The notes beneath the pieces were generated by a model. The model searched no databases. It was not told the origin of the DNA and saw only the letters and a program-made list of their open reading frames with translations. From Botryllus schlosseri (Eukaryota), in NCBI GenBank assembly GCA_051294905.1, contig CM119381.1:14198001-14262000 (forward strand): 64,000 nucleotides of DNA, in the 5' to 3' direction. A program made the translations under genes and the position numbers. Below, piece after piece: positions 6,001 to 58,300 of this stretch (position 1 is the stretch's first letter; each line of letters starts with the position of its first letter).

Positions 6001-9000
6001 TCCAGTTGGCTTTTGACCTAAACGAGAAGTAGTGATTGAAAACCGAGTACCAACAGTTAATGTTGGCGTCGTACCGTTTTTAAAGCGTGCTGGGCGACAG
6101 GATCGAACAATGATCGCAGGGCGTCGTCTGATAAACTGCGTGATTGGCAATTATCGACTGAAAAAAAAAGAACAGACAGCATAAAATCAGAGTTCTGACA
6201 TAACACTTTGCACATTTGCAACTTTAAACAGACTCACAATACTTCAATATCGCAATAAACTATATATTGATATTGCCAAATTTATTCGACTCCAAGCTGC
6301 TTTGCGGTTAACCGAATGTGAGATATAGATAGAATTTTGTTGTTGTTACGTAAACACGTAATAACAAGTGAACGGACTCGCGGACGACATACAACAACAC
6401 ACAGGTAACGGTACAACAGCAGCTCACGCATTTAAAGTCATGCGTTCAAGCACCTCGTAAAGCAGCACCGTTTGATAAAGATGAATAACTTAGCATACCC
6501 TCTCCCGGTGACCACATTGGGTTGACATCTAAAATTGGGTGGTCGTGCACGACACGAAATTGGTAAAACTGATCGACAACATCAAAGCGAATGCATTCAC
6601 TGTTGCTTCTATCCAGAGGGGGCTAGTAATACAGTACATCTACTTGTTCAGAGTACTCTAGCAGGTTTCGCCTGCTTGCTCTACTTATTCGAGTGGTTGT
6701 GTTTTACTCAATCACGCCATCTGCATTGTAGGCCTACCGACAAAAACAACCCGCAATGACAACTGTCTCGCTTCTGTCAACGCACCTGTGCTTTTGGCGA
6801 TACCTTCATCCAAGGGCACTTTTAAAGGCTAAAACAGAGACAGGAGTTACACAATGGCGACTTGCACGCGCAAAGCACAAACGTCTCACCGCGTTTTCCA
6901 TCAAATAAGTCTTGATGATATTGTCCGCCAACTTATACAATTCCTTCGTCGTCGAAGTTTGACGATATATTTCCGTCATCAGCACCAGCAACTGAATTAA
7001 TAACGGGAATCGTTCAGTGTCATAGCGGCCAGACGCTGTTTATGTAACAAAAACAAACCAGATGCGATGGGTCGTGTGAGTGAAAAACATAGTTTAAAAA
7101 CACTGCGGCGTGGGCGTGTTTCGTCTTCAGTTGGTTGAAGTCTAAAAATGGTCCGTGATTCTGCGGCTGTAAATGGAGCAGGAAAAAGAGTTTGAGTAAG
7201 TCCTGACGACACCCGTCATGACAGGCCTGAGGGGTGGACAGTGGACACCGCATAACTTAGGCATCATAGGCATACCATGGTGAAAGCTGTCGAACGTGTT
7301 TTTAGAGAGTGTAATGACTTTTTCAATATCGTAGGAGGCTAAGGTCGGTAAAACATAGACTTGGACACATCTGTTTTATCTGGCTGGGGAGAAATACGGG
7401 GGTGAAAAGATGTTGTGTCACAAAATTGTCCACATTCATTTGGATCAGAGGTGGGGTAAGTGACAAAGAACTTCAACTTTTTCAGAGTGTTGCCTACCTG
7501 CACCACTTACTGAAGCGGTCTTGATTGTAGACTTCTACTACTTCTTGGCATAAAATAGGCTACTAACCTTTTTAGCTTGGAAATCATGACCATACTTCTA
7601 TTTGCAATGATACATTGTGGTGACGAGACAATCAAAAACCAAGACCACTTATATATATATAATCAATTAATGCTTGTCTAGAGAAGTTGGAATTGATGTG
7701 TATCAAATCAGAGATCACATATCTTGATCAGGTCAAAATTAAAATATGCCAATATGCCAATGGAAACATTCTATAATAAAACACAAATTTATGTTAAAAA
7801 CATTTTCGGTCCACTTTAGGGGATATTAAAGAGTATAATCGAAACATTTGATCGAGAGACATTTTCTCTCTTTTTCTAGAGCTCTAATGATGAAAACCCT
7901 AGCCTTCCACGTCTATCATACAGGAATGAATCCAATAAGTGTATGAAAAATCAACTAAACAATTTTACAGCCAATAGATTGTTTTACAATAAGAAGCACT
8001 GTAGACGCAAGAGTTGGTCAAGAAGGGCTATTATGAATTCAGTATTATACTTTGACCAACACCAGACATTTATCGAAGAATGTCAAATCTCGGCATTCAT
8101 CACTTGAAATTTAATTTCAAAGGGCAATCCTCAAGTGCGCAAATATCAGACGCAACGCAATAAAAATGCGTTTGCGTGTGAATAAATAATGGCCCACGCA
8201 GGATTCTGACATCAATCAATGACCTTTTACAACCTAACGAAGTCTACAGACACACATGCCAATGGATTTATGCCTTAAGTTCCTTGTGGTGATGGTCGGG
8301 ATGCCATTCCACTGGCAATGCTTATCAATACATTCAAAAATGGTGCAGTCAGATACCTTGAATTGTCAATTTCAAAACAGATTTGCAATTTTCACTACTC
8401 TTGTTTTAGATTGAGATTTACACCTAACCACACAACAATGACTTACTCTACCTAGCCAGGTGATTAGATTGATTTCAAATTTTGAACTAACCGATGACTC
8501 TTCTGCTAACTCTTCGTCTTCAAAATTGATAATAGGCTTGGTCGCTTTGGTTGGGTCTCGTGATTTCTAAAAAATAACGGCAATTTTTACATGTCACTAA
8601 ATCATCACCGGTACAGAAATGTTATGGCAGATGGATGCTTGTTAACGAGTAAGGCAAAACTTGACCTATTACACTAACAACACACATAATCTGTTACTCT
8701 CTTCGGTCAGGGTTATTAAAGTTTGAAGACACTATTTCATTGTAAAGGGTATGTATGCAACTGCTGCAACTACTTTCGCTTTCAGTGGGATAAGATTGCA
8801 GATAAATATCCATCACAGGGCAGTTGCATAAACAACATTCCGATTTGACTATAGTCTATTACAAACAGCCACAATCCCGCAAGGTAATTCATTGCGTGTT
8901 GAAACAACAACAACAATATTTAAATCATGATGCATCTATTTGATGCTGCCGCTAGCTTGGTTGCATGTATCAAACAACAGCTGTTGATCAAGACAAAAAA

Positions 9001-43907: not shown

Positions 43908-46900
43908 TCACACCAACTGAGGCTTGAACTTACCGCCACCGCACGCTTCTTGATATGATGGCAGACTGGTGTCGCAACGCACGCCGTGATGGTTCCTACT
44001 CGCTGGACACGGCGGGAAAGAAACTCTGACAGTGTCGTCACGTGACATCACGTGTCTATACACGACCTTAGCCGGCGCAGTGTCGATGTCTACACAAGGC
44101 TGATTGACTTCGGGTTGAGTTGCTTCTACTTCCAACGCTAGAAAGTTATCGTGTCGGTTATCATTGGTGGCCACTGACACGGTTTCGGATTTGTTCCGTT
44201 TCTTGAATATCCCGCGAATGTACCCGTTTCGCTTCTTGGCGGGATACGTCAGGCATACGACTAGGCCTATAATCAAAACCACGATCAAGACCGACAAAAG
44301 ACCAACTGTGATGCTCTGCGTCTTGCTGATGCCATCGCCGTCTTTCGGGTAAATGATGATTTTCGTGTTCTGCGCCGAAGCGTTCGAGTCCTCGCCCTTC
44401 TCGCACTGCGTGCCGGTATATCCGTCCATGCAAAAGCACGAATACTTCCCCGCGCCTTCGCGCTGGCAGATGCCTTCGTTCATGCAGGGATTGTCGCCGC
44501 ACGGGTCTTCCAGCTCGCAGGCGTCTCCGTAGTATCCGTTCTGGCATTTACACGCAGCGATTCCGTCTCGTTTCAAGCACCAGCCGTGCTTGCACTCCTT
44601 GGAGCATACTGGACTCGTTTGACGACAGGACGACCCGGTGAAACCGCTCGGGCATACGCATTCTGCTCCGTTTCCGTTGGATTTGCATGTTCCTCCTGGG
44701 AAGTAATGTTGCATTTAGATATTCGGCAGGTCTCCGCGCGCGAGGTTCTAATGGCCTTGTGGGTCTTACTCAGAGATAGCTAGCCAAAGTAGTCACATTT
44801 GTCAACACAAATAGGCGGACTTATCGAAGTTCCCATGATACAAGGGCTGCGATGACTATTTCACTAGTCAATGTAACGCAAAACCCGTCCCACAACTACT
44901 CTTTACTTTACAAAACCCAAATAGGTGGAATTAGTTGAAAAGCATCCACTTTAAGTAGCGTAAGTAGGAACCTGCTTGAGTAGTCCCAAAATATAGAAGT
45001 GTTTCGTTTATGAGCTTATAAGCCTAGGGCACAAGCAGGGCCTACCACAGGCTTATACGAAAGTATAGGCCCGACATTAAAGGACCATAGGCGGTAAAAG
45101 ACCATGAGACCAGAAACAACAACAAACGAACAGTGCGCTACAATTACAGCACGGTAACGGAAATTCACGTTCTCGCCTTTTAACCGTTCTACGAATAATG
45201 TCAAAATTTCACTATTATTTGTGTACGCAAAAAGAAAGAATAACCTATACAGCCACTATAATTTGACGTAGTAAGCAAGTAGTGGAAAATTGCGGATGAC
45301 TGTGACGTCGCGGGCCATATTATCATGTAAGACCGTCAACTGTCTGCGGGCCCGCGGGCCGTGTGTTGCCCGTCCCTGTTCTAACGCGTGTGTCAAGTGT
45401 GTTAATCATGATGAGGCAGGTCATGTGGTATTCAAGTCGCACGCACATAGTTGCTGTTTGTAAAGCCGTATTGGTTCAACAACATCGATTATGGATATAA
45501 TGCCTTGTAGTCATGTCTACTGCAGACCATATGGACTTACTGTTAAGTCGAAGCGATAATTATATTTATAGGTATCCAGAAACTGCTAAGATCATCGCCA
45601 ATCGGAAATCTCCAATTCTTTGGTCAATCGCACATTATACATTACATATTATCCGACTAAATCATCACGTTTCACGTGAACACCAAAAGTGCAATGAAAT
45701 GCAATAAACCAGATGTTTTCCTGTAACCTGTGTAGGCAAAGCTTTTGCTCACGTTGCTTTGCAGTATGTATCGCTATTGGAATTGCGCTAGGTCATTCAA
45801 AACACCGATTTTCTCACGCAACCGCAGAGCTAAGCCGTCCCCAGCGGGATAACCGAACGAAATCAACCGTCTCCATAATACTCTCTTAGCAAAACGCGGT
45901 ACTAGAGTCGCGCATAGTCGCGTCAAAACGGCTCCTCCACGCTGGGAAGCACCCCGCTGCGATACAGCTTACTATAATCGCCGCTATCTTGAGACCGTCT
46001 GTTGTCTTTCGGATTACTGGCTTATTTCATACAAGCACAATGCGATCGCACCTCTGCAATCAGTTACAAGACTGTGTTTTCGCAGCGTTGATTGCCTTTA
46101 ATCGCAACCGTACTGGAGAATTCCCTTCACGTCGCAAAGACATTTGCATCGCGGTATTGCGACAGCGAATGGTTCATTGTAAATCTCCCCATCAGCGTCA
46201 AGACAAATAAATAAAAGATACGAGACTGTTGATACAAAAAGTTGTTTTGAATTCTCTACTAGTTGCTGACGATTACCCAGACTAGTTCCAGTCGAAAATA
46301 TTCGGGTTTATTTCAATATGATTATATTATTTATAATTGTCTACAAATTATTAACAAACTCAACTTAGTCGAATACCAATTACATTATTTCGTGCCTTAC
46401 ATCCCAGCAACGTATACAGAACATATAGTTTGTTGACGTGGGCCGCAATTTCAATACCGATATGTGACGATGGTGAACGACACAGTTTGTGACGATGGTG
46501 AACAACACATACTCTGGCGTATTTCAGGTTCTGTAGGTCGAAATGATCAATGCTTCAGAAAAACCCGGAAATAAAATTTAACGAGGTCGCGAAAGAAAGT
46601 ATACCATGCTCGATTACATCATCGTTGAATTGTGGAGAAGGCGGACTTCTTGAATTTCATAAAGACCGCACTTTTCATCCGTAGTCTATCGCATAGTGCC
46701 ATGGTATAGCGCACAGCCGCACAGGCGAAATTTGAATGAACTCCGAATACATATACCAGTGCGGGTCACATTAGCCCAGTAATTGAACGCACGCACATTT
46801 AACACCTTAACACGGTTTCAATGTAATTAGCCAAAATATCATTGTCCCGGTACAACAGCTAATGGATTTTACCATAATATGTCACAAAGCGTCTGCTTGA

Positions 46901-49827
46901 CCCATTTGTATCGCTTGCCGCAAGAAAGTAACCAGATACCTATACTATACCAGGCTCGCGAGCGTACACAGCACAGCGCTACAATAGGGCGGGAACGCGA
47001 TATCGTCTGGAAATTACAAACCATGGGAAAATCGACCATTTTTCAAAATAAGGTATCGATTTACCGTTGATTGATTCAAAGAGTAAATAATACACCGGTT
47101 TTGCTTACGGCGTCAATCAATAGCGCATCACCGTGTTAACCACAGCACTTCTATTACCAGCGCGGTATAAATAGAAGTTGAGCATATATGAACTCATTTT
47201 CTGGATAAACATAAGCGTCTTACCATTGAAGCAGACAACTTCCGAACACAGCGACCTTCGACGCTCGCATTGCTGACCCACAAAGCCAGGTCGGCATTCG
47301 CAACGATACCCTGTCAGGCCTTCCGGAACGCACGAGCCACCGTTTTTGCATGGATTGTTCAAGCATTCGTGATCCTCGCACAGCGACCCCGAATAACCCG
47401 GCGAGCATTGGCAAGTGTAGCCGCTAGACGTTGCCTGTAATCATAGTAATCAGGTTTCGGATATTTGGCTTACCCACACCTAAATGTACGCGGCCACGTA
47501 CCTTGCATTGCCCGCCGTTTTGGCAGGGACTTGCGTCGCAAATGTTTGTGGAATATTCGCACCGCTCTCCCGTAAAACCGGGCTGGCATTCGCAAGCGAA
47601 GGTGCCGAGACCGGCGTTGCGACAACGCGCGCCGTTCTTGCACGGTTTGTGATGCACGCAAAAATTCAAATCTATACACGAAACAATATCAGTGTTTTGG
47701 GAAAATTCTCTCAGAAACCGCGCTGCCAGTAATTACTCACCGAGGTTGCAGAACATTCCACCCCAGCCCTGCTTGCAAATGCATTGGAAGGGCGATTGGC
47801 ACGTGCCGTGTCGACAGCGCGGTTCCGGCACGCATTTCTCGCAGAGATTGCCCTGCCATCCATACCGGCACCTGATGAAAAATCGAGATTTAGCTCCTAA
47901 ATTTACACCGCACAAGTGTGCCTGCGAAATGTTTTGACCTATATCGATAACGGGTGACTTACAGGCATAATGACTCCGTCTGAGTGGGTATTAAAATCAA
48001 TAGGTAGTGTTATCAGAACATGAATGTTTATTGTTTATGTACTCAAGGTTCTGGGAAAAGTTTCTTGGCCGTATATAATGTGAACGTAACTTACTGGCAC
48101 TCGTTCGGTTGCTTGCAGAATCCATGGGCCGTGCTGCATCCTGGGCGACATATAGCTGTAACATGGACGGAATCATCATTTTTGAAGCATAAATACGAAG
48201 CCAGAATCGTACATGGTCGTGGGCCCGAACATATGCGTAACCAAACAGATACTCTTTCCATTACTCCGGGTATGAGTTGCATATTAAAGTCGATCGTACG
48301 CTATAAGACGGGTTGTTGATTGTTCGGATTGTTCCATAGATACAGACCGCGGGGTTAAGAATCGGGCGTTATCAAGAGGATCAAAGCTTGTGATGTAAAA
48401 GGCGATAGACCTAACATGAATGCTAATTTGCCGCAACGGGTAGGCGAGTTACATCTTCACATCTCAACCTAGAAGTGTGAATGTAATGAAATCACTAATT
48501 GAATGGCGGTCCGCCGCCGTAATTTAACGATTCAGATGAACACCTCAAGATAGCAAGGAACGAGGAGCTTTGACAATAGTTAGTTGTCGCGTAATAATAA
48601 ACCAATTACTTTTACACACTTCTACCGAAGATGTGAGTGAAGCCGTTCTTGTTTACTCACGTTCTAAGCAGTAGTTCCGCGACGATCTTGATTTCCAGCC
48701 ATCGAGGCATACTTTCTTTCCATCGTTATTACAAGTCCAGTGTCCGAAGCGGTCGTTCCGAGGCTTACAGTAATTGCTGCACCCACTCCCGTAGTAGAAT
48801 TGTTTGCAACGGACTCTATAGGAAAATCTCATTAGTCGGCCTTGCTGGCTCTGTGTTTCCGTTTTCCACGTCCTGCCAGGTCGGAGTGGCGATATATCTT
48901 TGGTCATGCTAGCGATGGACGGCCCTAGAATAACAAAAAGAGTTGCAATTTGGAGGGGCTGTTCACACTTCCATTTGTGTGCCTTGAAGTCGACTTCTAT
49001 CAAAATACACCAATCAAAACTCTTGTCAGGAAAAGGAGTTCGTATACCACATAAAAATAGTACATTGCACGCTCTCTCATTCGAAATTTCATGCCAGTGA
49101 CGTCATATTTTGTTACGATTGTTGATATACAATGTTGCTGTACTAGTTGCTGACGATTACCCCTGACGAGTGTCAGCCGAAAATATTCGGGTTCATTTCA
49201 ATATGAATATACGATGGCATTGTTTCGAATTGGTGTCATACCTGCAATCTTGCCTTCGATCTGATCATAAGCCGTGATAAGCAATGAAAGCGAACCCTGA
49301 AGTGTGAATTGTGATAAAACAATTATTCGTCCAATACAATTGATACAAGGTCTTTGACATACCGGCCACGTGAAATTGAAGTCCGCCGTCAGTATGTTAT
49401 CAGCGTAGTCGCGTAGGTTGAATTCAAAAGCATTTCCGCCAAGAGTTGCTGATCGCCGGGAACCAAAAGTACATCCGGCACGAGATTTGTAGTGTGTGAA
49501 GCAAACGTTGAACGCCGTTCTGCACTGAAGGCTGCACGTACTCCCATGGTTAAATTGCGAATTATCTTGACAGCATCTACCCTGCGCGTCTCTGCCACCA
49601 TTATTTTGGAATTCCTCTATTCGAAGTTGAACAACGCCAGATCCGTATACCTGGAACGAAAAGAAACAGCTAACATATCCTGCACATGGCTCGGTTAAAA
49701 CTTAAACCTTTACCAACATACGATCAATCTACTGACACTACAATCATTCAATAAACAATCTCACCTTTTGAACATTTAATAAGGCTAATAGAAATATAAA
49801 ATTCACAACAAAAACGCAGCTATTCAT
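43908..49827 (-). CDS. Delta: Delta-type Notch ligand (signal peptide, MNNL/C2, DSL, 8 EGF repeats, TM, short cytoplasmic tail), 676 aa
   Basis: Nine phase-consistent exons: 49765-49827 (signal peptide [21 protein letters not shown]), 49363-49650 ([14 protein letters not shown]...FNFTWP), 49242-49296, 48661-48924 (DSL: [30 protein letters not shown]), 48095-48155, 47741-47871, 47502-47671, 47224-47434, 43908-44695; total 2031 nt. There is no cysteine-rich (vWC) domain, so this is Delta rather than Serrate/Jagged. Confidence 0.95.
46227..46322 (+). repeat. Hammerhead-family repeat copy with mutated core (CAGACTA instead of CTGACGA)
   Basis: TACTAGTTGCTGACGATTACCC...CGAAAATATTCGGGTT...TTTCAATATG matches 49141-49205; U4 and G8 core positions are changed. 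Confidence 0.75.
49079..49212 (+). repeat. Best-preserved copy of a ~130-150 bp dispersed repeat family containing a hammerhead motif
   Basis: Shared from ATTCGAAATTTCATG...TGACGTCATATTT...ATTGTTGATATACAATGTT through TTCATTTCAATATGAATATAC with copies at 46227, 55361 and 56896/56968. Confidence 0.85.
49149..49194 (+). ncRNA. Minimal type I hammerhead ribozyme motif, canonical core
   Basis: ACCC (49159-62) CUGACGA (49163-69) G-UGUCAGC-C GAA AA-UA-UU C^GGGU (49189-92): stem I ACCC/GGGU, 1-bp stem II, palindromic AAUAUU helix III, NUH triplet UUC with predicted cleavage after 49188. Activity has not been tested. Confidence 0.75.
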
Positions 49828-52328: not shown

Positions 52329-55300
52329 TTACTTGGGCTGGTACCCTTGCTGGCCGTAGTATTGCTGGTAGTTGGTGTAGTAGTTTTGGTACTGACTTTG
52401 TGCCTGCTGCTGATAGTACTGAAGCCACTGCTGTGAGTAATCCTGTGTAATAATGAAAAGGATTTAGAGCACTAGAGTTGCACTAAAATCTAATGATGAT
52501 CGCCAGAAATGTTAAAATTGGTAATGTGAAGTCGTGGAAATTACATTGCATTGCACATAAACATGTCCGATTGAATGCCGGAAACATAAATTTCACACAG
52601 CGTTGGCAAAAGTTTCGTGCCGACCACGCTGAGAGATGGATGGATCGGTAAAATTACCTTTTTGATACCACTTTATTTCCGAGACGCAACCGTCGTGGGC
52701 AACACCATCAACACCAAGTGGTAAGTAACAAACTAGTCTACTATTTTTTCACAGTACTTGAGTAAGTGATATTTTTATACTATATATAGTATATATTATA
52801 TTATATTACGCAACAGTTTTTTAAAGTTATTTTTCTTCGTTTCTCAACAGATTTTTCCCATTTTCGACTCGGTTATGTTCGCGTCACTTTCTCAAGTGAA
52901 AAAATAGCCGCTGTGGCACAGTAACTGAATACATTTTCGAAACTACACCATTTGAGGTATCTTTTATCATTTCGTGTTAGCCGCAATGACGCAGCCTTCC
53001 CTTTCGAGAGTGGCCCGGCCGCCTTCCAACAACTGCTGAAAGTATGCGACCTATCGACCAAACTTACTTTTTGAAACTACTTACTTCCAGTACTTTCAGA
53101 CATGGCTTCGAAATCACTACTTCTACTTGTGATTAAGCACAAACGCTGACTACTTTGAACGTGTCTGATCTTTCCGCACGGGATAAATTTTGATTGAGCA
53201 ATCTGTTGAATGACGAAACGAGTTCGCCCGCAAGAGACAATACAAGTCACTGTGACAAGAATAACACGGCGAATACCTGTTGCTGGCCGTAACCCGACTG
53301 CTGATACCCCTGTTGGGTTTGGTTGGTGTTTGACGGCTGGGAGAAGTTGTATCCCGTCGACGGATATCCGCTTGTGTTTTTGTTGGTGTTGGAAGAGTTG
53401 TACGACTGATGATGATTGATGTACGAGTAGGACTGGAAGGAGGACGATGACGATTGGAAATCCATAATTTCAATCGATACTCTCGACACTCACCGAAGCC
53501 GATTGAGGAGCCCCAGATTGGACCGATGCGCCGCGCTTTCCGGCACTGGAATTTTTCGAGTGGTCACCGCGGCCCTTGTTTCCTCCGAAGCTTTGATTTT
53601 GTCTGTAAAAGGCGAGATCACGCAATTTTGCTTAAACCGAATATCGAACTGCCTTACCTGTTGTAGCCACCGTAGCCTCCCCTGTTCTGGCTTCCTTGAG
53701 ACTGCCACCCTGCAAAGACCAAGCAGTGAGATCGTACCACGACACCGCACAGGCAGTGTGGATCTTTCAATTTTTAAAGTAGACATCTTCGATTAACCGC
53801 TCACAGTATGCGACTCCACAATCGAATCTATTTTTTTAAACTATGACAGTACTTTTGACAGACCTAGGAAATTACTACATCTGCTTGTGTATTTGCATCA
53901 AAACTTACGCTATTGCTTCTACTAAGGGCTGTCACCGAGTCACAAGGTTCTGAGTAGAATTCACAGTGCAGAGGGTCGAGTCTGAGTCGTAGCATTGTCA
54001 TTGTGTTCACTGTTCAGTCACGAGTACAAGTCATGCCAAAATCACTTTTTTACAACCCGGATCGGATGACATCGAATGCTTCGCATTCTTATACAAAATT
54101 TCCACACTTTTAGCACTTTCTCGCTATATTTTCAAAGTACCACCACCGATAAACGAAATGCCAATAATGTGGTAACTTTACTATTCCTCAAAGTTACAAT
54201 GAAATGTCCATCTTGGACGTCGAGTGACAAGTCTTATGACCCGAGTACCAGTTGAGTCATACACAAATTGACCAAGTCGAGTCGAGTAAATTTCACTCAA
54301 AATCATTCGCGTCAAGCCGAGTCACCAAAAAATCGCGACTCGAGTCATTACAACCCTGCTACTACACGAGAACCAACCAATGTTAAATACTTTGACCGCT
54401 GCTGCATCGGAGCAATACTATTAACAGTTAGTTAGGTACTTTCGAGGTTACGTTTTACCGACACCGATCTAGCCCGCACCTTTGTTGGTCTGTCCGAATC
54501 CTCCCCCGCGGCCTCTGTCGCCTCTCGAAAAGTCTAGAACACCCGAGCGAAAAATCGTTACAGGCGGGCCAAATCAAACCTCAAACCCATCACACCGACC
54601 TCTTCTGCCATGGTTGAACGGGCGGGACCCATATCCACCACCCCGTCCGAGTGCCGGTGGACCGCCACCGTACGGCCGCGGGAAGTTCATCATGCCGCCA
54701 CGACTCCCAGGCCTGCTCCAAGGCGCGGCCGGGCCACCGAACCGCTGGGCCTGCCCGCGAAATCTCGGCTGCTGGTGTCTGAAACCCCCGCCTCTGCCAC
54801 CTCTGTTCCTGTTTTGATTGTCCTGAGAGGCTGAGACAGATGCAAGATTATTAGGGAAGCAACAAAGTCATCGGTGACATGGGTGCACATTAGGGCTCTT
54901 TTTTTACTAATTTGACTAGACTCCGAGAAAAATGCATCACGCCAAATTTGGCTCAATTCCAACCAGTAGATGGGAAGTGATGACAATTTGAAATTTAGTC
55001 CATTTTTACGGTGACAAAGTTCGTCACTTCGCCATGACTGAACATTGTGTTCCAGGAATGCCGAGAGCACAGCTTTCTCACGCATTTCCATCTCGAGACG
55101 GGCCTGTAGTAGCGTTTAAATAAAGAAATTGCTAATCGATGATAAAATTACGACGTTGATGAGCTGGAAACTAGACTACTTCGTTGAAGATATATAGGAA
55201 AGTATGTTTGCTAAATGATGGTCAATAGCTGAACTGAAATGCATGCCTTGGAGGTGACTTTTCTCGAAAGACGTCAACTAAATGTGTGCCAACAGGAGTT

Positions 55301-58300
55301 CGTGTACAATGTACATCTAAAATTGGAACATTGAGTCTAAGCGATCTATGCGCCTCGATTATTCGAAATTTCATGTGACGTCATATTTGGTGACACCATT
55401 GTTGATATACAATGTTCTTTCCAATTCTCTACTAGCTGCTGACAATAGCCCCTGATGAGAGTCAACTGAAAAAATTTGGGAGCATTTCAATACGATCACA
55501 CTATTCAATTGAACTGAAATTGTCTTTGTGCGAAATTTGAACAGCCTAGTGTACCTACTTCGAGCTCGTTTTTCGGGAGGCGGCGCGTTCTTCGCCCCCT
55601 CCTCGCGGTACTTCCCCACCAGCTTTTTCGCTTCTTCCTCGGCCAGATCGGTGAAAACTACGCTATCAAAGAGATTTCCTTTCTCCGGAACGGTAAAGTT
55701 GGCTGTGACAACACAAAATTGAGTCAGCACGGCGGCACAGGCGGCGTTTTGACTACCCCGTCCCAAATTTACGAAGGCCGCGACACAAACACCCCAGAGT
55801 TCAGAAGCCGAGAGTAAATATCCCGACATTACGATACCTTTCATTTCAAGCACGGCCACTTCAGGCACCTCTTCCCCCTCGTCCGAAGTGCGTTTGTCAA
55901 AACGAGTCTTAAACTCCTCCTCAGATGGTACAATTACAACAGCCTTGCGCTGAAAGCCCGCAAACGGGCGCATTTTCCGCCTCTGGGCTGACGCGTACAC
56001 ATTTGTCTTATGTTGCATTCGCGTTTTGACGCACACGTCAAGCAGGCGGCGCCCATCGTAAATTTATCATGTCGGACCAACGACAAGCATGGGCAAAAAA
56101 AGAAGCAAAGCAACGATTCAGTTTCTTCAGTTAGATATCATTTTACAATGATCTGCAGAGTACACAAAATCGATATCGTTACGTCACACCAGCTAACGCT
56201 AACGGTCCTTATCACTTACCTGTCGAGCCACCTGGAACAGACTAGGACAGAGGGGCGGGCTCAAAATCGACCAGCTGCCATCCAAAACATGACCACGCAG
56301 TTGCAAAACATAACAAATTAACCAATATCAGTTAATGGAGTACATTCAGTCTTGACGTAGAAAACACTAAAACCAAGACAAGGTTAGGGGAAAGTCGAAA
56401 CCGTCATGTCTGGCGTGTGATAAAACTTCCGCATTCTCTCAATTTTCTACGTTCAGAGTCAGATGCAAGTGCAAAGGCTGTAACAAACTTTGCTGAAGCA
56501 ACAGCACTCATGCAGAATCGATAGGCTATTCAAGGACAGCATCCAAGTTCACATTTCATCCAATTTTGTTCACTGAATCTCGTTTCATCTTATGTTGTAC
56601 GGGAATTCTTTTAGGGCAAGCGGTTTTTCAGCATTGTAAAAGACAAATAGTCAGTATAGAGTAGAATAAAATAAGCTGCCAACAATGATCCCATCTAGTT
56701 GAGGAGAAGGTTCAAAACAGAATATTTAGATATGAACCATCCACACCAGACATGGCCTGACAACTACAAGTGCCGAGTGTCTGATTTCCTATTGGAATCA
56801 TGACAGTCATCCAATAGACTAGCTAGTTAGAATGGCAACGTATGGCAGAAATTTGTCAAGTCGCTACCTACTCCGAAGCATGTACACAGTAACAGTTACC
56901 CCTGACGAGTGTCAGCCGCAAATATTCGGGTTCATTTCAGTATGAATATACTATTTAACAGTAACAGTTACCCCTGACGAGTGTCAGCCGCAAATATTCG
57001 GGTTCATTTCAATATGAATATACTATTTAACAGTAACAGTAGTAAAAGAATACATGCAACATTCAGAAGGATTGTGGTGTTGTCTGGAGATATTCGACAG
57101 GCATCCAATTTCTATAGTCACATTCCATACAAACATACACCCTCATAAATACCAAACTGCGCAACTCACATTCCGGATGGCAGCAATTTCGTTCTCTCGC
57201 CCGCCCCAGTCCTCAAACGCAATTTAAAAGCGGGATTATCTTCCTACCTGATCGATGATGAAGTTCCTTCGCTTCCTGGACGCAATTTGCAACAGCCGGT
57301 TCAAACATTGAGTGGCATTATGGATCAAAAGCTCCCAACGGTTTGCATAGTTTTGTTTCCGACTCACACCCATAACCTGAAACGCAAACGTCGTGAGTGA
57401 CATAATTTGGAAGTGTTCATATTTCGCCTTATGTCTATGCTATTTTCAATTCAATGATGCTACGGGACACCGCTACAATGGCAATAGCAAGCAATGTCAA
57501 CATGTTCCTACATACATAGACTTGAACAACATCCCCCGCACACGGGCGATGGGTAATAAATAATGCAAGGAACAAGGTAGGGTTTTGTACCGAGCGCACA
57601 CGGCAAATGTCTACATCACGCAAACGGCGGTTAAAATGAAGGTTCATTACACTGTGTGCAACCTGACGGATCATAATCATAATCAAGCAGAATTGCAAGT
57701 AACTGACATTGCTATTGTATTTGGCCATGGTGCAGATGCAGCCTATATGGCAAGTGATCAGTGAGTAAGGGTCAAAAACACTTACCTGAGCAGGAATCTC
57801 CGACTGCTATGTGAAAAACAGCAGAAGCTACGAGATGAAATTTGGTTGTTACGATATAGAAATTATTCAACATTACATTATTATATTCTTTATATACAGT
57901 AAAACTGGTAAATACGCACATTTCCGGGGAGCAACCCGCCCACAAGGAAAATGGCGAGATTGGAGTAAACTTTTAAAATTTCAGTAATGCAATCAAACTG
58001 TTGTTCCTATGCAATACACGAAGACATAGGCGCTGAACTCAGGCATGCTAGGCATGCAGCGCATACCTAGGGATTTTTTTGGGTATGTGGCATACCCAGA
58101 ATTCGGTCAGGGCTGTAATTGACTGGCTGGTGAATTGATCGATTTAGAAATAAGCAATGTATTTCGTAGTGCTGCTGAACACGTAACGAAATCAGCAGCA
58201 ACACATTCAGGCGCGTAGCAAAATCCCGTCCTTTTGAAATGACCATTCTGACGCTAATATCCAGTTGCAATTCAGTTAGTCGTATTTTATCAGTGTTGCG

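What the first reader, a model, noticed from the sequence alone, without database searches (positions are those of the whole stretch)
49079..49212. Dispersed short repeat family built around a minimal type I hammerhead ribozyme (retrozyme / Penelope-type mobile RNA candidate)
Seen in sequence: five related copies (46227, 49079, 55361, 56896, 56968) share a 130-150 bp unit. The 49159-49192 copy has every canonical hammerhead core nucleotide (CUGANGA...G-C...GAAA...UH), a 4-bp stem I and a 1-bp stem II. Helix III is only the palindrome AAUAUU, which cannot close as a monomer hairpin but can pair between two RNAs. Established: minimal type I hammerheads with palindromic helix III that cleave as dimers occur in Penelope-like element pseudo-LTRs and animal retrozymes. 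Inference: this is a non-autonomous, ribozyme-bearing retro-element family mobilised by a PLE-type RT; no RT or GIY-YIG ORF is present in this window.
Basis: partly seen in the sequence, partly recalled or inferred. Interest (0 to 1): 0.85.

Follow-up and report, generated by a model that had tools for sequence, protein, structure and literature searches.

The report
Hammerhead ribozyme tails of Penelope retrotransposons
The five repeats are broken-off 3' ends of an abundant, protein-coding Penelope-like retrotransposon whose tail carries the already known minimal hammerhead ribozyme motif, so this is an ordinary finding with one less ordinary structural detail.

Summary
Five related copies lie in the window, and the copy at 49159-49192 has every hammerhead core nucleotide, a 4-bp stem I, a 1-bp stem II and a loop-less AAUAUU helix III.

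The repeats are not a separate non-autonomous retrozyme family. They are 5'-truncated 3' tails of an autonomous 2.69-kb Penelope-like element (PLE). [quoted passage not shown] The exact 34-nt hammerhead occurs 3,093 times genome-wide.

Minimal, dimer-type hammerheads in PLE repeats, mostly as solitary truncated copies and close inverted pairs, were described in 2014.

The added detail is that stem II is completed by a 6-bp pairing between loop II and a box 7-9 nt upstream of the core. This pairing covaries in 13 related PLE lineages. Hammerhead pseudoknots of this kind, including one with a 1-bp stem II, are also published.

RNA-seq shows the tails transcribed passively on both strands, with no read ends piling up at the predicted cut site.

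Four of the five window copies are mutationally dead.

The parts
48957..49223 (+). Copy B: a 5'-truncated PLE tail matching unit positions 2412-2688 at 88% identity. It may run from 48938 to 49242 if the weak TGCAAT flank repeat is a target-site duplication.
   Evidence: blastn and local alignment to the tandem unit of L051; flank words
48948..49065 (+). Remnant of the last ~39 codons of the PLE ORF (end of the GIY-YIG region). The stop codon TGA has mutated to TGC.
   Evidence: tblastn of the 859-aa frame, residues 821-859, E=2.5e-9; sequence read
49149..49154 (+). Leader box GCUGAC, the 5' strand of the pseudoknot that completes helix II
   Evidence: Perfect 6-bp complement of 49172-49177, duplex -8.1 kcal/mol. 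Covaries in 13 lineages.
49159..49192 (+). Intact minimal type I hammerhead. It comprises stem I ACCC/GGGU, core CUGACGA, the G10.1-C11.1 pair, loop II UGUCAGC, GAA, palindrome AAUAUU and C17. The predicted cut is 49188|49189.
   Evidence: Sequence; identical 34-mer found 3,093 times in the genome; homologous motifs at the same place in related PLEs
49172..49177 (+). Loop II strand GUCAGC of the pseudoknot. It can also pair with core CUGAC 49163-67, which would give an inactive hairpin.
49182..49187 (+). Helix III palindrome AAUAUU. It has no loop and can pair only with a second copy.
   Evidence: Sequence. Relatives carry other perfect palindromes at this place: AAGCUU, AGUACU, AGCGCU, AACGUU, AAACGUUU, AAUAUAUU, AACAUGUU.
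49203..49205 (+). ATG that starts the PLE ORF in full-length copies, 14 nt after the cut site. The insertion ends a few codons later.
   Evidence: Translation of L051 and sequence
46217..46343 (+). Copy A: a truncated tail matching unit 2568-2691 at 84% identity. The hammerhead remnant at 46275-46307 has the CUGANGA box destroyed. The leader at 46265-70 is kept.
55244..55509 (+). Copy C: an old truncated tail, about 75% identical to the unit from position 2435 on. It is flanked by an 11-bp direct repeat TGAACTGAAAT (55230-40 and 55510-20). In the hammerhead remnant at 55448-55480 the palindrome is lost, C11.1 has become U, and loop II has one mismatch to the leader.
56896..56957 (+). Copy D1: a 62-nt tail fragment that starts 2 nt before stem I and so has no leader box. 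GAAA is mutated to GCAA (A13 to C at 56919).
56968..57029 (+). Copy D2: a duplicate of D1 with one difference and the same GCAA mutation. ACAGTAACAG stands before, between and after the two copies (56886-95, 56958-67, 57030-39). This means the fragment and its target-site repeat were duplicated together after insertion.

Best explanation
The five repeats are dead, 5'-truncated insertions of one Penelope-like retrotransposon family.

The full element is a 2,692-bp unit with a single 848-aa ORF. [quoted passage not shown] It also has a ~150-nt 3' untranslated stretch.

In tandem or partial-tandem copies, this stretch plus the first codons of the next unit form the pseudo-LTR.

The hammerhead sits in the pseudo-LTR, about 100 nt after the stop codon and 14 nt before the next ATG.

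Inferred mechanism, following the published model for PLEs:
- Read-through transcripts of tandem copies are cut after C17. This releases an RNA that begins just upstream of the ORF.
- Helix III exists only as a palindrome, so two hammerhead copies, or a protein helper, are needed.
- Helix II is built from one closing pair stacked on a 6-bp pairing of loop II with a leader box upstream of stem I.
- Target-primed reverse transcription from the 3' end, with frequent early termination, then scatters tails that all carry the hammerhead.

Shown here: the element's anatomy, its copy number, the truncation pattern, and covariation of the hammerhead helices.

Inferred only: that the RNA cleaves, and that it cleaves as a dimer.
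For: 1. All five window copies align to the 3'-terminal 63-290 nt of one unit. They share an end at unit ~2684-2699 and have different 5' starts.

2. Genome-wide, 48 copies in 30 loci show the same pattern: 3' ends lie within 13 nt of each other and 5' ends are scattered. About half have a head-to-head inverted partner. The listing shows many close (-,+) pairs.

3. Longer copies run upstream into an ORF. A tandem array with a 2,692-bp period has intact 859-codon frames.

4. RVT_1 matches at E=7.8e-9. GIY-YIG matches weakly in this protein (E=0.026) but in 9 of 14 aligned homologues (best 3.9e-6). There are 842 homologues with RVT_1-containing domain sets. A profile of the alignment weakly hits telomerase and group II intron RTs.

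5. The exact hammerhead 34-mer is present 3,093 times, against 0 for the control.

6. In older copies the hammerhead carries fewer mismatches than the rest of the tail: 0.084 per site, against 0.150 in the upstream UTR, 0.224 at the ORF end and 0.123 downstream.

7. Related PLEs (41-64% protein identity) have a hammerhead at the same place with compensatory changes:
- stem I differs in sequence and is 3-8 bp long
- the core pair changes from C3-G8 to U3-A8 in L082 and L170
- helix III is a different perfect palindrome in each lineage
- the leader-loop II pairing is kept in 75 of 78 cells, with 4-5 pair types at each of six positions

8. Leader-loop pairing is specific. Matched pairs reach >=5 contiguous pairs in 11 of 14 lineages, against 13 of 178 cross-lineage pairings (p=3e-9). 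Offset windows give 13 of 17 against 9 of 312 (p=1.6e-14).

9. Literature:
- Minimal hammerheads in PLE pseudo-LTRs occur mostly as single truncated copies or close opposite-strand pairs and are thought to act as dimers (PMC4209133).
- 5' truncation, inverted upstream copies and a 30-40-bp tail are PLE hallmarks (PMC8557442).
- In the Anolis Poseidon element the hammerhead overlaps the ORF start (PMC11167929).
Against: - No Rfam hammerhead model matches.
- For the hammerhead stretch alone, the minimum-energy fold is two unrelated hairpins (-10.5 kcal/mol). The double-hammerhead fold evaluates at only -0.2 to -4 kcal/mol.
- The AAUAUU self-duplex is worth only -0.2 kcal/mol.
- RNA-seq shows no place where reads begin or end at the predicted cut site, although depth there is 200-1000.
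- Reads cover both strands equally and 64-96% run on into unrelated flanks. The 5' part of the ORF has no coverage. So bona fide element transcripts were not sampled, and cleavage is untested.
- Published work found low in vitro activity for PLE hammerheads (PMC4209133).
- Published work also found that hammerhead mutants do not impair insertion in vitro (PMC11167929).
- The conservation excess over the immediately adjacent 12 nt is small (0.084 against 0.094). The loci were found with queries that included the hammerhead.
Confidence: 0.9

Rival explanations
1. The repeats would be a separate non-autonomous, ribozyme-bearing element (an animal non-LTR retrozyme or SINE-like RNA). It would be copied in trans by a PLE enzyme and would perhaps circulate as a small circular RNA.
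For: - Short copies far outnumber full-length ones. One search finds 3,093 hammerheads. The first-look candidate counts are 1,546 for the 140-nt tail query, 2,362 for the 268-nt copy C tail query and 2,569 for the ORF piece.
- One 72-bp tandem duplication lies in the window.
- One same-strand pair 212 nt apart appears in the listing.
- A 2026 preprint argues that animal retrozymes derive from PLE pseudo-LTRs (10.64898/2026.07.22.740005).
Against: - Copies have no common 5' end, and their starts are scattered over more than 130 nt.
- Longer copies continue without a break into the PLE coding sequence.
- Copies B and C still encode the ORF's C-terminus.
- The 72-bp tandem carries a core-killing A13C mutation, lacks the leader, and includes the duplicated target site, so it arose after insertion.
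- No unit-length back-joint typical of circles was seen in RNA-seq.
Confidence: 0.04
2. The conserved tail motif would not work as a ribozyme in this family. It would be kept for another reason, for example as a binding or priming structure for the element's RT, or as part of the pseudo-LTR promoter and 5' UTR. On this view the hammerhead likeness is a relic.
For: - Alternative hairpins are thermodynamically favoured.
- The helix III palindrome is very weak.
- There is no cleavage signature in RNA-seq.
- In the Anolis PLE, hammerhead mutants insert normally and no reads end at the cut site (PMC11167929).
- Naiad PLEs thrive without hammerheads (PMC8557442).
Against: What is conserved across lineages is exactly what a hammerhead needs and little else:
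- the invariant core letters
- the U3-A8 double change
- a 10.1-11.1 pair
- A15.1 and U16.1 at the ends of a palindrome
- a non-G at position 17
- a stem I of varying sequence
- a pseudoknot of the type shown experimentally to speed hammerheads (PMC3088659)

The core-loop II hairpin that dominates the energy model is not conserved in relatives.
Confidence: 0.12

Closest known systems
Minimal hammerheads of metazoan Penelope-like elements (Cervera & de la Pena 2014, PMC4209133; Lunse, Weinberg & Breaker 2017, cited in PMC6765202)
   Same: - Type I topology with a short stem I (3-8 bp).
- No helix III hairpin; instead a palindrome at positions 15.x-16.x that implies action as a dimer.
- Location in the pseudo-LTR of an RT plus GIY-YIG element.
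- Thousands of mostly solitary truncated copies, and close opposite-strand pairs.
- The U3-A8 core variant is seen in relatives.
   Different: - The published metazoan consensus has a long helix II hairpin (6-8 bp) with one unpaired nucleotide after A9. More distant relatives found here (L087, L094, L100, L116, L162) have that form.
- This family and its closer relatives have only the 10.1-11.1 pair. They make the rest of helix II with a leader box 7-9 nt upstream of the core.
- I could not read Lunse et al. 2017, so I cannot say whether they already drew this form.
Pseudoknot-stabilised hammerheads (Perreault et al. 2011, PMC3088659)
   Same: - A 4-6-bp Watson-Crick pairing between loop II and nucleotides flanking stem I holds stems I and II parallel.
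- About 40% of known hammerheads use such a pairing.
- One tested construct has a 1-bp stem II with a 6-bp pseudoknot, and mutation with compensation controls its speed.
   Different: - The tested 1-bp stem II example is a type II hammerhead from a metagenome.
- Those ribozymes have a normal helix III and act as monomers.
- Here the pseudoknot is combined with a loop-less palindromic helix III inside a retrotransposon.
Poseidon PLE of Anolis carolinensis, PAc (PMC11167929)
   Same: - Canonical N-terminal domain, RT and C-terminal GIY-YIG order.
- Tandem organisation.
- The hammerhead overlaps or abuts the ORF start.
- No RNA-seq reads end at the cut site.
   Different: [quoted passage not shown] Here the ATG lies 14 nt after the cut.
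- PAc activity was shown to be protein-assisted. Nothing was tested for this element.
Animal non-LTR retrozymes (PMC7229834; preprint 10.64898/2026.07.22.740005)
   Same: They carry a type I hammerhead with a weak palindromic helix III, and they are linked in evolution to PLE pseudo-LTRs.
   Different: Retrozymes are ORF-less 170-400-nt units in tandem arrays, expressed as small circles. The copies here are dispersed truncation products of an ORF-bearing unit.

Membership tests
Hammerhead ribozyme, type I | Conserved core: C3 U4 G5 A6 N7 G8 A9, G12 A13 A14, A15.1-U16.1, and H17 before the cut | tested here: met
   Copy B at 49163-49188 has all of them. So do 3,093 identical genomic copies. The other four window copies fail.
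Hammerhead ribozyme, type I | Stem I formed by the 5' and 3' ends, supported by covariation | tested here: met
   ACCC/GGGU in this family. In 13 related lineages stem I is 3-8 bp with different sequences.
Hammerhead ribozyme, type I | Helix II closed by the 10.1-11.1 pair | tested here: met
   The closing pair is present in all lineages (G-C, C-G or U-A). The rest of the helix is supplied by a 6-bp leader-loop II pairing: 75 of 78 cells paired, p=3e-9 and p=1.6e-14 against controls. It is a pseudoknot, not a hairpin.
Hammerhead ribozyme, type I | Helix III | tested here: inconclusive
   No intramolecular helix is possible because the loop would be 2 nt. A perfect 6-8-nt palindrome is kept with different sequences in every lineage, which fits pairing between two copies. 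However, the AAUAUU duplex is worth only -0.2 kcal/mol.
Hammerhead ribozyme, type I | Match to a curated covariance model (Rfam RF00163 and relatives) | tested here: not met
   No match at the gathering score or at E<=10. The whole-genome RF00163 search found nothing, but its controls did not ring either. This is expected for a motif that lacks the helix II and III hairpins.
Hammerhead ribozyme, type I | Site-specific self-cleavage | tested here: inconclusive
   RNA-seq shows no pile-up of read ends at L051 7342|7343. The reads come from passively transcribed solitary fragments, and ordinary libraries are a weak test.
Penelope-like element (canonical, C-terminal EN+) | Single ORF with an RT of the PLE/telomerase-like kind, including the DKG motif | tested here: met
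   RVT_1 matches at E=7.8e-9. PDKG is invariant in alignment A1. The profile weakly hits telomerase RT and group II intron RTs. There are 842 homologues.
Penelope-like element (canonical, C-terminal EN+) | C-terminal GIY-YIG endonuclease with the CCHH motif | tested here: met
   The motif VVYEYRCHCDCGYVGRT...RINQHV is in the translation. Pfam GIY-YIG is below cut-off in this protein (E=0.026) but matches 9 of 14 aligned homologues (best 3.9e-6). C731, C733, H752 and H791 are invariant.
Penelope-like element (canonical, C-terminal EN+) | Tandem or partial-tandem copies forming pseudo-LTRs, strong 5' truncation, and inverted 5'-truncated partner copies | tested here: met
   A 2,692-bp tandem array is present. 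5' ends are scattered and the 3' end is common. Head-to-head partners occur in about half of 30 loci. Two classes of 3' ends about 35-40 nt apart fit the published tail (PMC8557442).
Penelope-like element (canonical, C-terminal EN+) | Hammerhead motif in the pseudo-LTR | tested here: met
   In L051 the hammerhead at 7313-7346 lies between the stop codon (7209-7211) and the next ATG (7357).
Animal non-LTR retrozyme | ORF-less unit of about 170-400 nt with a defined length, in tandem arrays, giving small circular RNAs | tested here: not met
   Copy lengths are variable, the copies are collinear with the PLE ORF end, and they are dispersed. The window's only tandem is a 72-bp post-insertion duplication of a dead fragment. 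No circle-type joint was seen.

The most novel reading that the evidence does not exclude
The clade of PLEs to which this family belongs may use a hammerhead architecture not yet described for retrotransposons. Helix II would be reduced to one pair and rebuilt by a 6-bp pseudoknot with a leader box at a fixed 7-9 nt from the core. Helix III would exist only between two copies.

In this family loop II can pair either with the leader (active form, -8.1 kcal/mol) or with the core's own CUGAC (inactive form, -4.7 kcal/mol). The leader could therefore act as a switch. Under that switch only transcripts that start upstream of the box, meaning read-through from a preceding tandem copy, would be able to cleave.
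Probability: 0.3. Interest if true: 0.55.

Novelty: new member of a known kind. Interest (0 to 1): 0.33.

Why it matters
This gives a clean, very abundant example of a PLE family that looks recently active. It has more than 3,000 identical hammerheads, intact ORFs and tandem arrays.

The hammerhead is stripped to the minimum and leans on a covarying pseudoknot. That makes it a convenient system for an open question: whether PLE hammerheads really cleave in vivo, and whether tandem context, dimerisation or the element's own protein switches them on.

For genome annotation, the practical point is that these short repeats should be masked as PLE tails. They should not be called a new retrozyme or SINE family.

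Tried and rejected
- **Rfam scans of the window.** The gathering scan and the E<=10 scan over 45.5-57.5 kb found no hammerhead. The only weak hits (snoZ182, Atu_Ti3, HOTTIP_3) are chance.
- **RF00163 search of the whole genome.** It found nothing, but the control genomes did not ring either, so it says nothing.
- **Simple CUGANGA...GAAA...UH pattern.** It is not specific: 38 hits against 17 +/- 10 expected.
- **Energy models.** RNAfold and cofold do not recover the hammerhead. They prefer two hairpins. These tools cannot score the pseudoknot, so I used duplex energies only. One search crashed without output.
- **PDB searches.** Sequence and profile searches gave only weak RT hits and no GIY-YIG hit.
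- **Strict palindrome-plus-4-bp-stem descriptor.** It found only 6 of 82 related loci. Many contigs lack the tail, or their motif deviates from the strict descriptor. A descriptor restricted to short loop II (5-9 nt) gave 17 distinct motifs.
- **MAFFT alignment A2.** It puts the leader boxes out of register. I therefore did not use the count of structure pairs and counted pairs with my own register search. That search picks the best leader and so leans slightly towards pairing. The controls cover this.
- **Lunse et al. 2017.** It could not be read.
- **Read laying.** It gave no support for cleavage or circles. Because full-length transcripts were not sampled, this is not evidence against them.
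- **Rejected readings.** It is not a MITE, because there are no terminal inverted repeats. It is not a tRNA-derived SINE, because the copies are collinear with a coding element.
Full report
**1. The observation**

The window holds one repeat family with five members. They share a 72-nt core at 46262, 49147, 55436, 56886 and 56958.

In copy B the sequence reads ACCC-CUGACGA-G-UGUCAGC-C-GAA-AAUAUU-C-GGGU, at 49159-49192. It has every invariant hammerhead core nucleotide, a 4-bp stem I, one closing pair for stem II and a six-letter palindrome in place of helix III. The cut would fall at 49188|49189.

The other four copies are damaged:
- Copy A has lost the CUGANGA box.
- Copy C has lost the palindrome and changed C11.1.
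- The two short copies D1 and D2 have GAAA changed to GCAA.

No Rfam model sees the motif.

**2. What the repeats are**

A search of the window's own 495-Mb genome with 49079-49218 gave 1,546 first-look candidates.

In the 30 loci fetched, copies end within 13 nt of each other at the 3' side but start at scattered points. About half have an inverted partner joined head to head.

Comparing the loci with each other showed that some copies continue upstream for 850 bp or more. They run into an ORF with the GIY-YIG signature VVYEYRCHCDCGYVGRT.

A search with that upstream piece found copies 97-100% identical. Among them was a tandem array with a 2,692-bp period. The fetched array (L051) has two intact 859-codon frames.

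The protein evidence is as follows:
- The frames carry RVT_1 (E=7.8e-9).
- GIY-YIG is weak in this protein (E=0.026). It matches 9 of 14 aligned homologues.
- There are 842 homologues in public data.
- The DKG motif and the CCHH residues are invariant in the alignment.

The hammerhead lies at L051 7313-7346. That is about 100 nt after the stop codon and 14 nt before the next unit's ATG, so it sits in the pseudo-LTR.

All five window copies align to the last 63-290 nt of this unit. Copies B and C still encode its last ~35-40 residues. The window has no RT.

The exact 34-nt hammerhead occurs 3,093 times in the genome. The reversed control occurs 0 times.

The repeats are therefore truncated tails of an autonomous Penelope-like element. 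This is the situation described by Cervera and de la Pena (PMC4209133): thousands of minimal hammerheads, mostly single and 'probably related to truncated PLEs', some close together on opposite strands. The truncation, inverted partners and short tail extension are listed as PLE hallmarks in PMC8557442.

**3. Is the hammerhead real?**

Within this family, older copies carry fewer changes in the 34-nt motif than in the rest of the tail:

| Region | Mismatches per site |
|---|---|
| Hammerhead (34 nt) | 0.084 |
| Upstream UTR | 0.150 |
| ORF end | 0.224 |
| Downstream tail | 0.123 |

The contrast with the adjacent 12 nt is small (0.094). The sample was also chosen with hammerhead-containing queries.

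Stronger evidence comes from relatives. I fetched unit-length contigs and metagenome loci that encode proteins 41-64% identical. They have a hammerhead at the same place, with these differences:
- different stem I sequences
- the U3-A8 double change in the core in two lineages
- a different perfect palindrome in each lineage

More distant relatives (24-30% identity at the C-terminus) carry the published form, with a long helix II hairpin and one unpaired base after A9.

**4. The pseudoknot**

In this family and its closer relatives, stem II is a single pair that closes a 6-8-nt loop (7 nt in this family and most relatives). Six of the loop letters are complementary to a box that ends 7-9 nt before C3. 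In the window this is GCUGAC 49149-54 paired with GUCAGC 49172-77.

Across 13 lineages, 75 of 78 positions pair, with 4-5 different pair types at each of the six positions.

The pairing is specific:

| Comparison | >=5 contiguous pairs | p |
|---|---|---|
| Matched leader and loop | 11 of 14 | |
| Cross-lineage combinations | 13 of 178 | 3e-9 |
| Distinct motifs, true leader window | 13 of 17 | |
| Offset control windows | 9 of 312 | 1.6e-14 |

The 6-bp helix can stack on the 10.1-11.1 pair to give a 7-bp helix II, the length of the hairpin in other PLE hammerheads. That geometric step is inference.

In this family loop II can also pair with the core's own CUGAC. That hairpin is weaker (-4.7 against -8.1 kcal/mol) and is not conserved in relatives. 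The 'switch' noted by another first-stage reader (s1-234323) is therefore at most a family-specific extra.

Pseudoknots between loop II and nucleotides next to stem I are a published and tested hammerhead feature, including a construct with a one-pair stem II (PMC3088659). An earlier follow-up of this scan on another piece of the same genome (s1-231978) reached the same reading, and I confirmed it independently.

**5. Does it cleave?**

This was not shown.
- Energy models favour other folds.
- The AAUAUU duplex is very weak.
- In three RNA data sets the tail is covered at a depth of 200-1000 on both strands.
- Between 64% and 96% of reads run on into unrelated sequence.
- The 5' part of the ORF is uncovered.
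- No position shows reads beginning or ending in excess.

The reads therefore come from solitary fragments carried inside other transcripts. A dimer-dependent ribozyme would not be expected to cut in that setting.

The published record is similar. PLE hammerheads show low activity in vitro (PMC4209133). The Anolis PLE shows protein-assisted cleavage, no effect of hammerhead mutants on insertion, and no read ends at the cut site (PMC11167929).

**6. Verdict**

- The ribozyme assignment and the PLE link are supported.
- The retrozyme reading is not supported.
- The finding is a new member of a known kind.
- The one point that may go beyond the literature I could read is the pseudoknotted helix II combined with the dimer-type helix III. 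I could not check it against Lunse et al. 2017.

Noticed in passing
window 49100-49107 and 55378-55385; L051 7242-7249: The palindrome TGACGTCA (a CRE/ATF-like site) is conserved in the tail about 60 nt upstream of the hammerhead. Related PLEs instead show repeated CCAAT-like boxes and a TATAAA just upstream of their hammerhead (L084, L106, L131). This may be the internal pseudo-LTR promoter.
   Followed up: no
window 56886-57039: A 62-nt PLE tail fragment and its 10-bp flank ACAGTAACAG are duplicated in tandem, so the flank stands three times. Both copies share the A13C mutation, so the duplication came after insertion.
   Followed up: partly
window 47265-47595: Three copies of a 39-nt repeat (TCGCA...GCATTCGCAA, 64-74% alike), spaced 111 and 181 nt apart. 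It is unrelated to the PLE tail.
   Followed up: no
L082, L164, L166, L167, L168, L170, L171: Unit-length (2.7-4.1 kb) contigs of related PLEs from marine metagenomes and Logan assemblies repeat their first 30-100 nt further on: after the stop codon, mostly at the contig's end. This is the assembly signature of tandem arrays or circles. The closest named homologue is a reverse transcriptase from the octocoral Chrysogorgia stellata (45% identity).
   Followed up: partly
L051 7370-7375 and 7408-7418: RNA-seq loose ends show two classes of insertion 3' ends about 35-40 nt apart. This fits the 30-40-bp 'tail' extension described for PLEs. All window copies belong to the short class, except possibly copy B.
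   Followed up: partly
L051 7371: T>C is seen in 35-60% of RNA reads and in most contig depth, which points to a subfamily polymorphism of the tail rather than editing.
   Followed up: no
L168 around 198-247: In one related PLE the ORF's ATG lies inside loop II of the hammerhead, as reported for the Anolis Poseidon element. In the family studied here it lies 14 nt after the cut.
   Followed up: no
window 47915-47971: A weak match to the plant snoRNA model Z182 (21.9 bits against a gathering score of 80, E=2.7), which is almost certainly chance.
   Followed up: no
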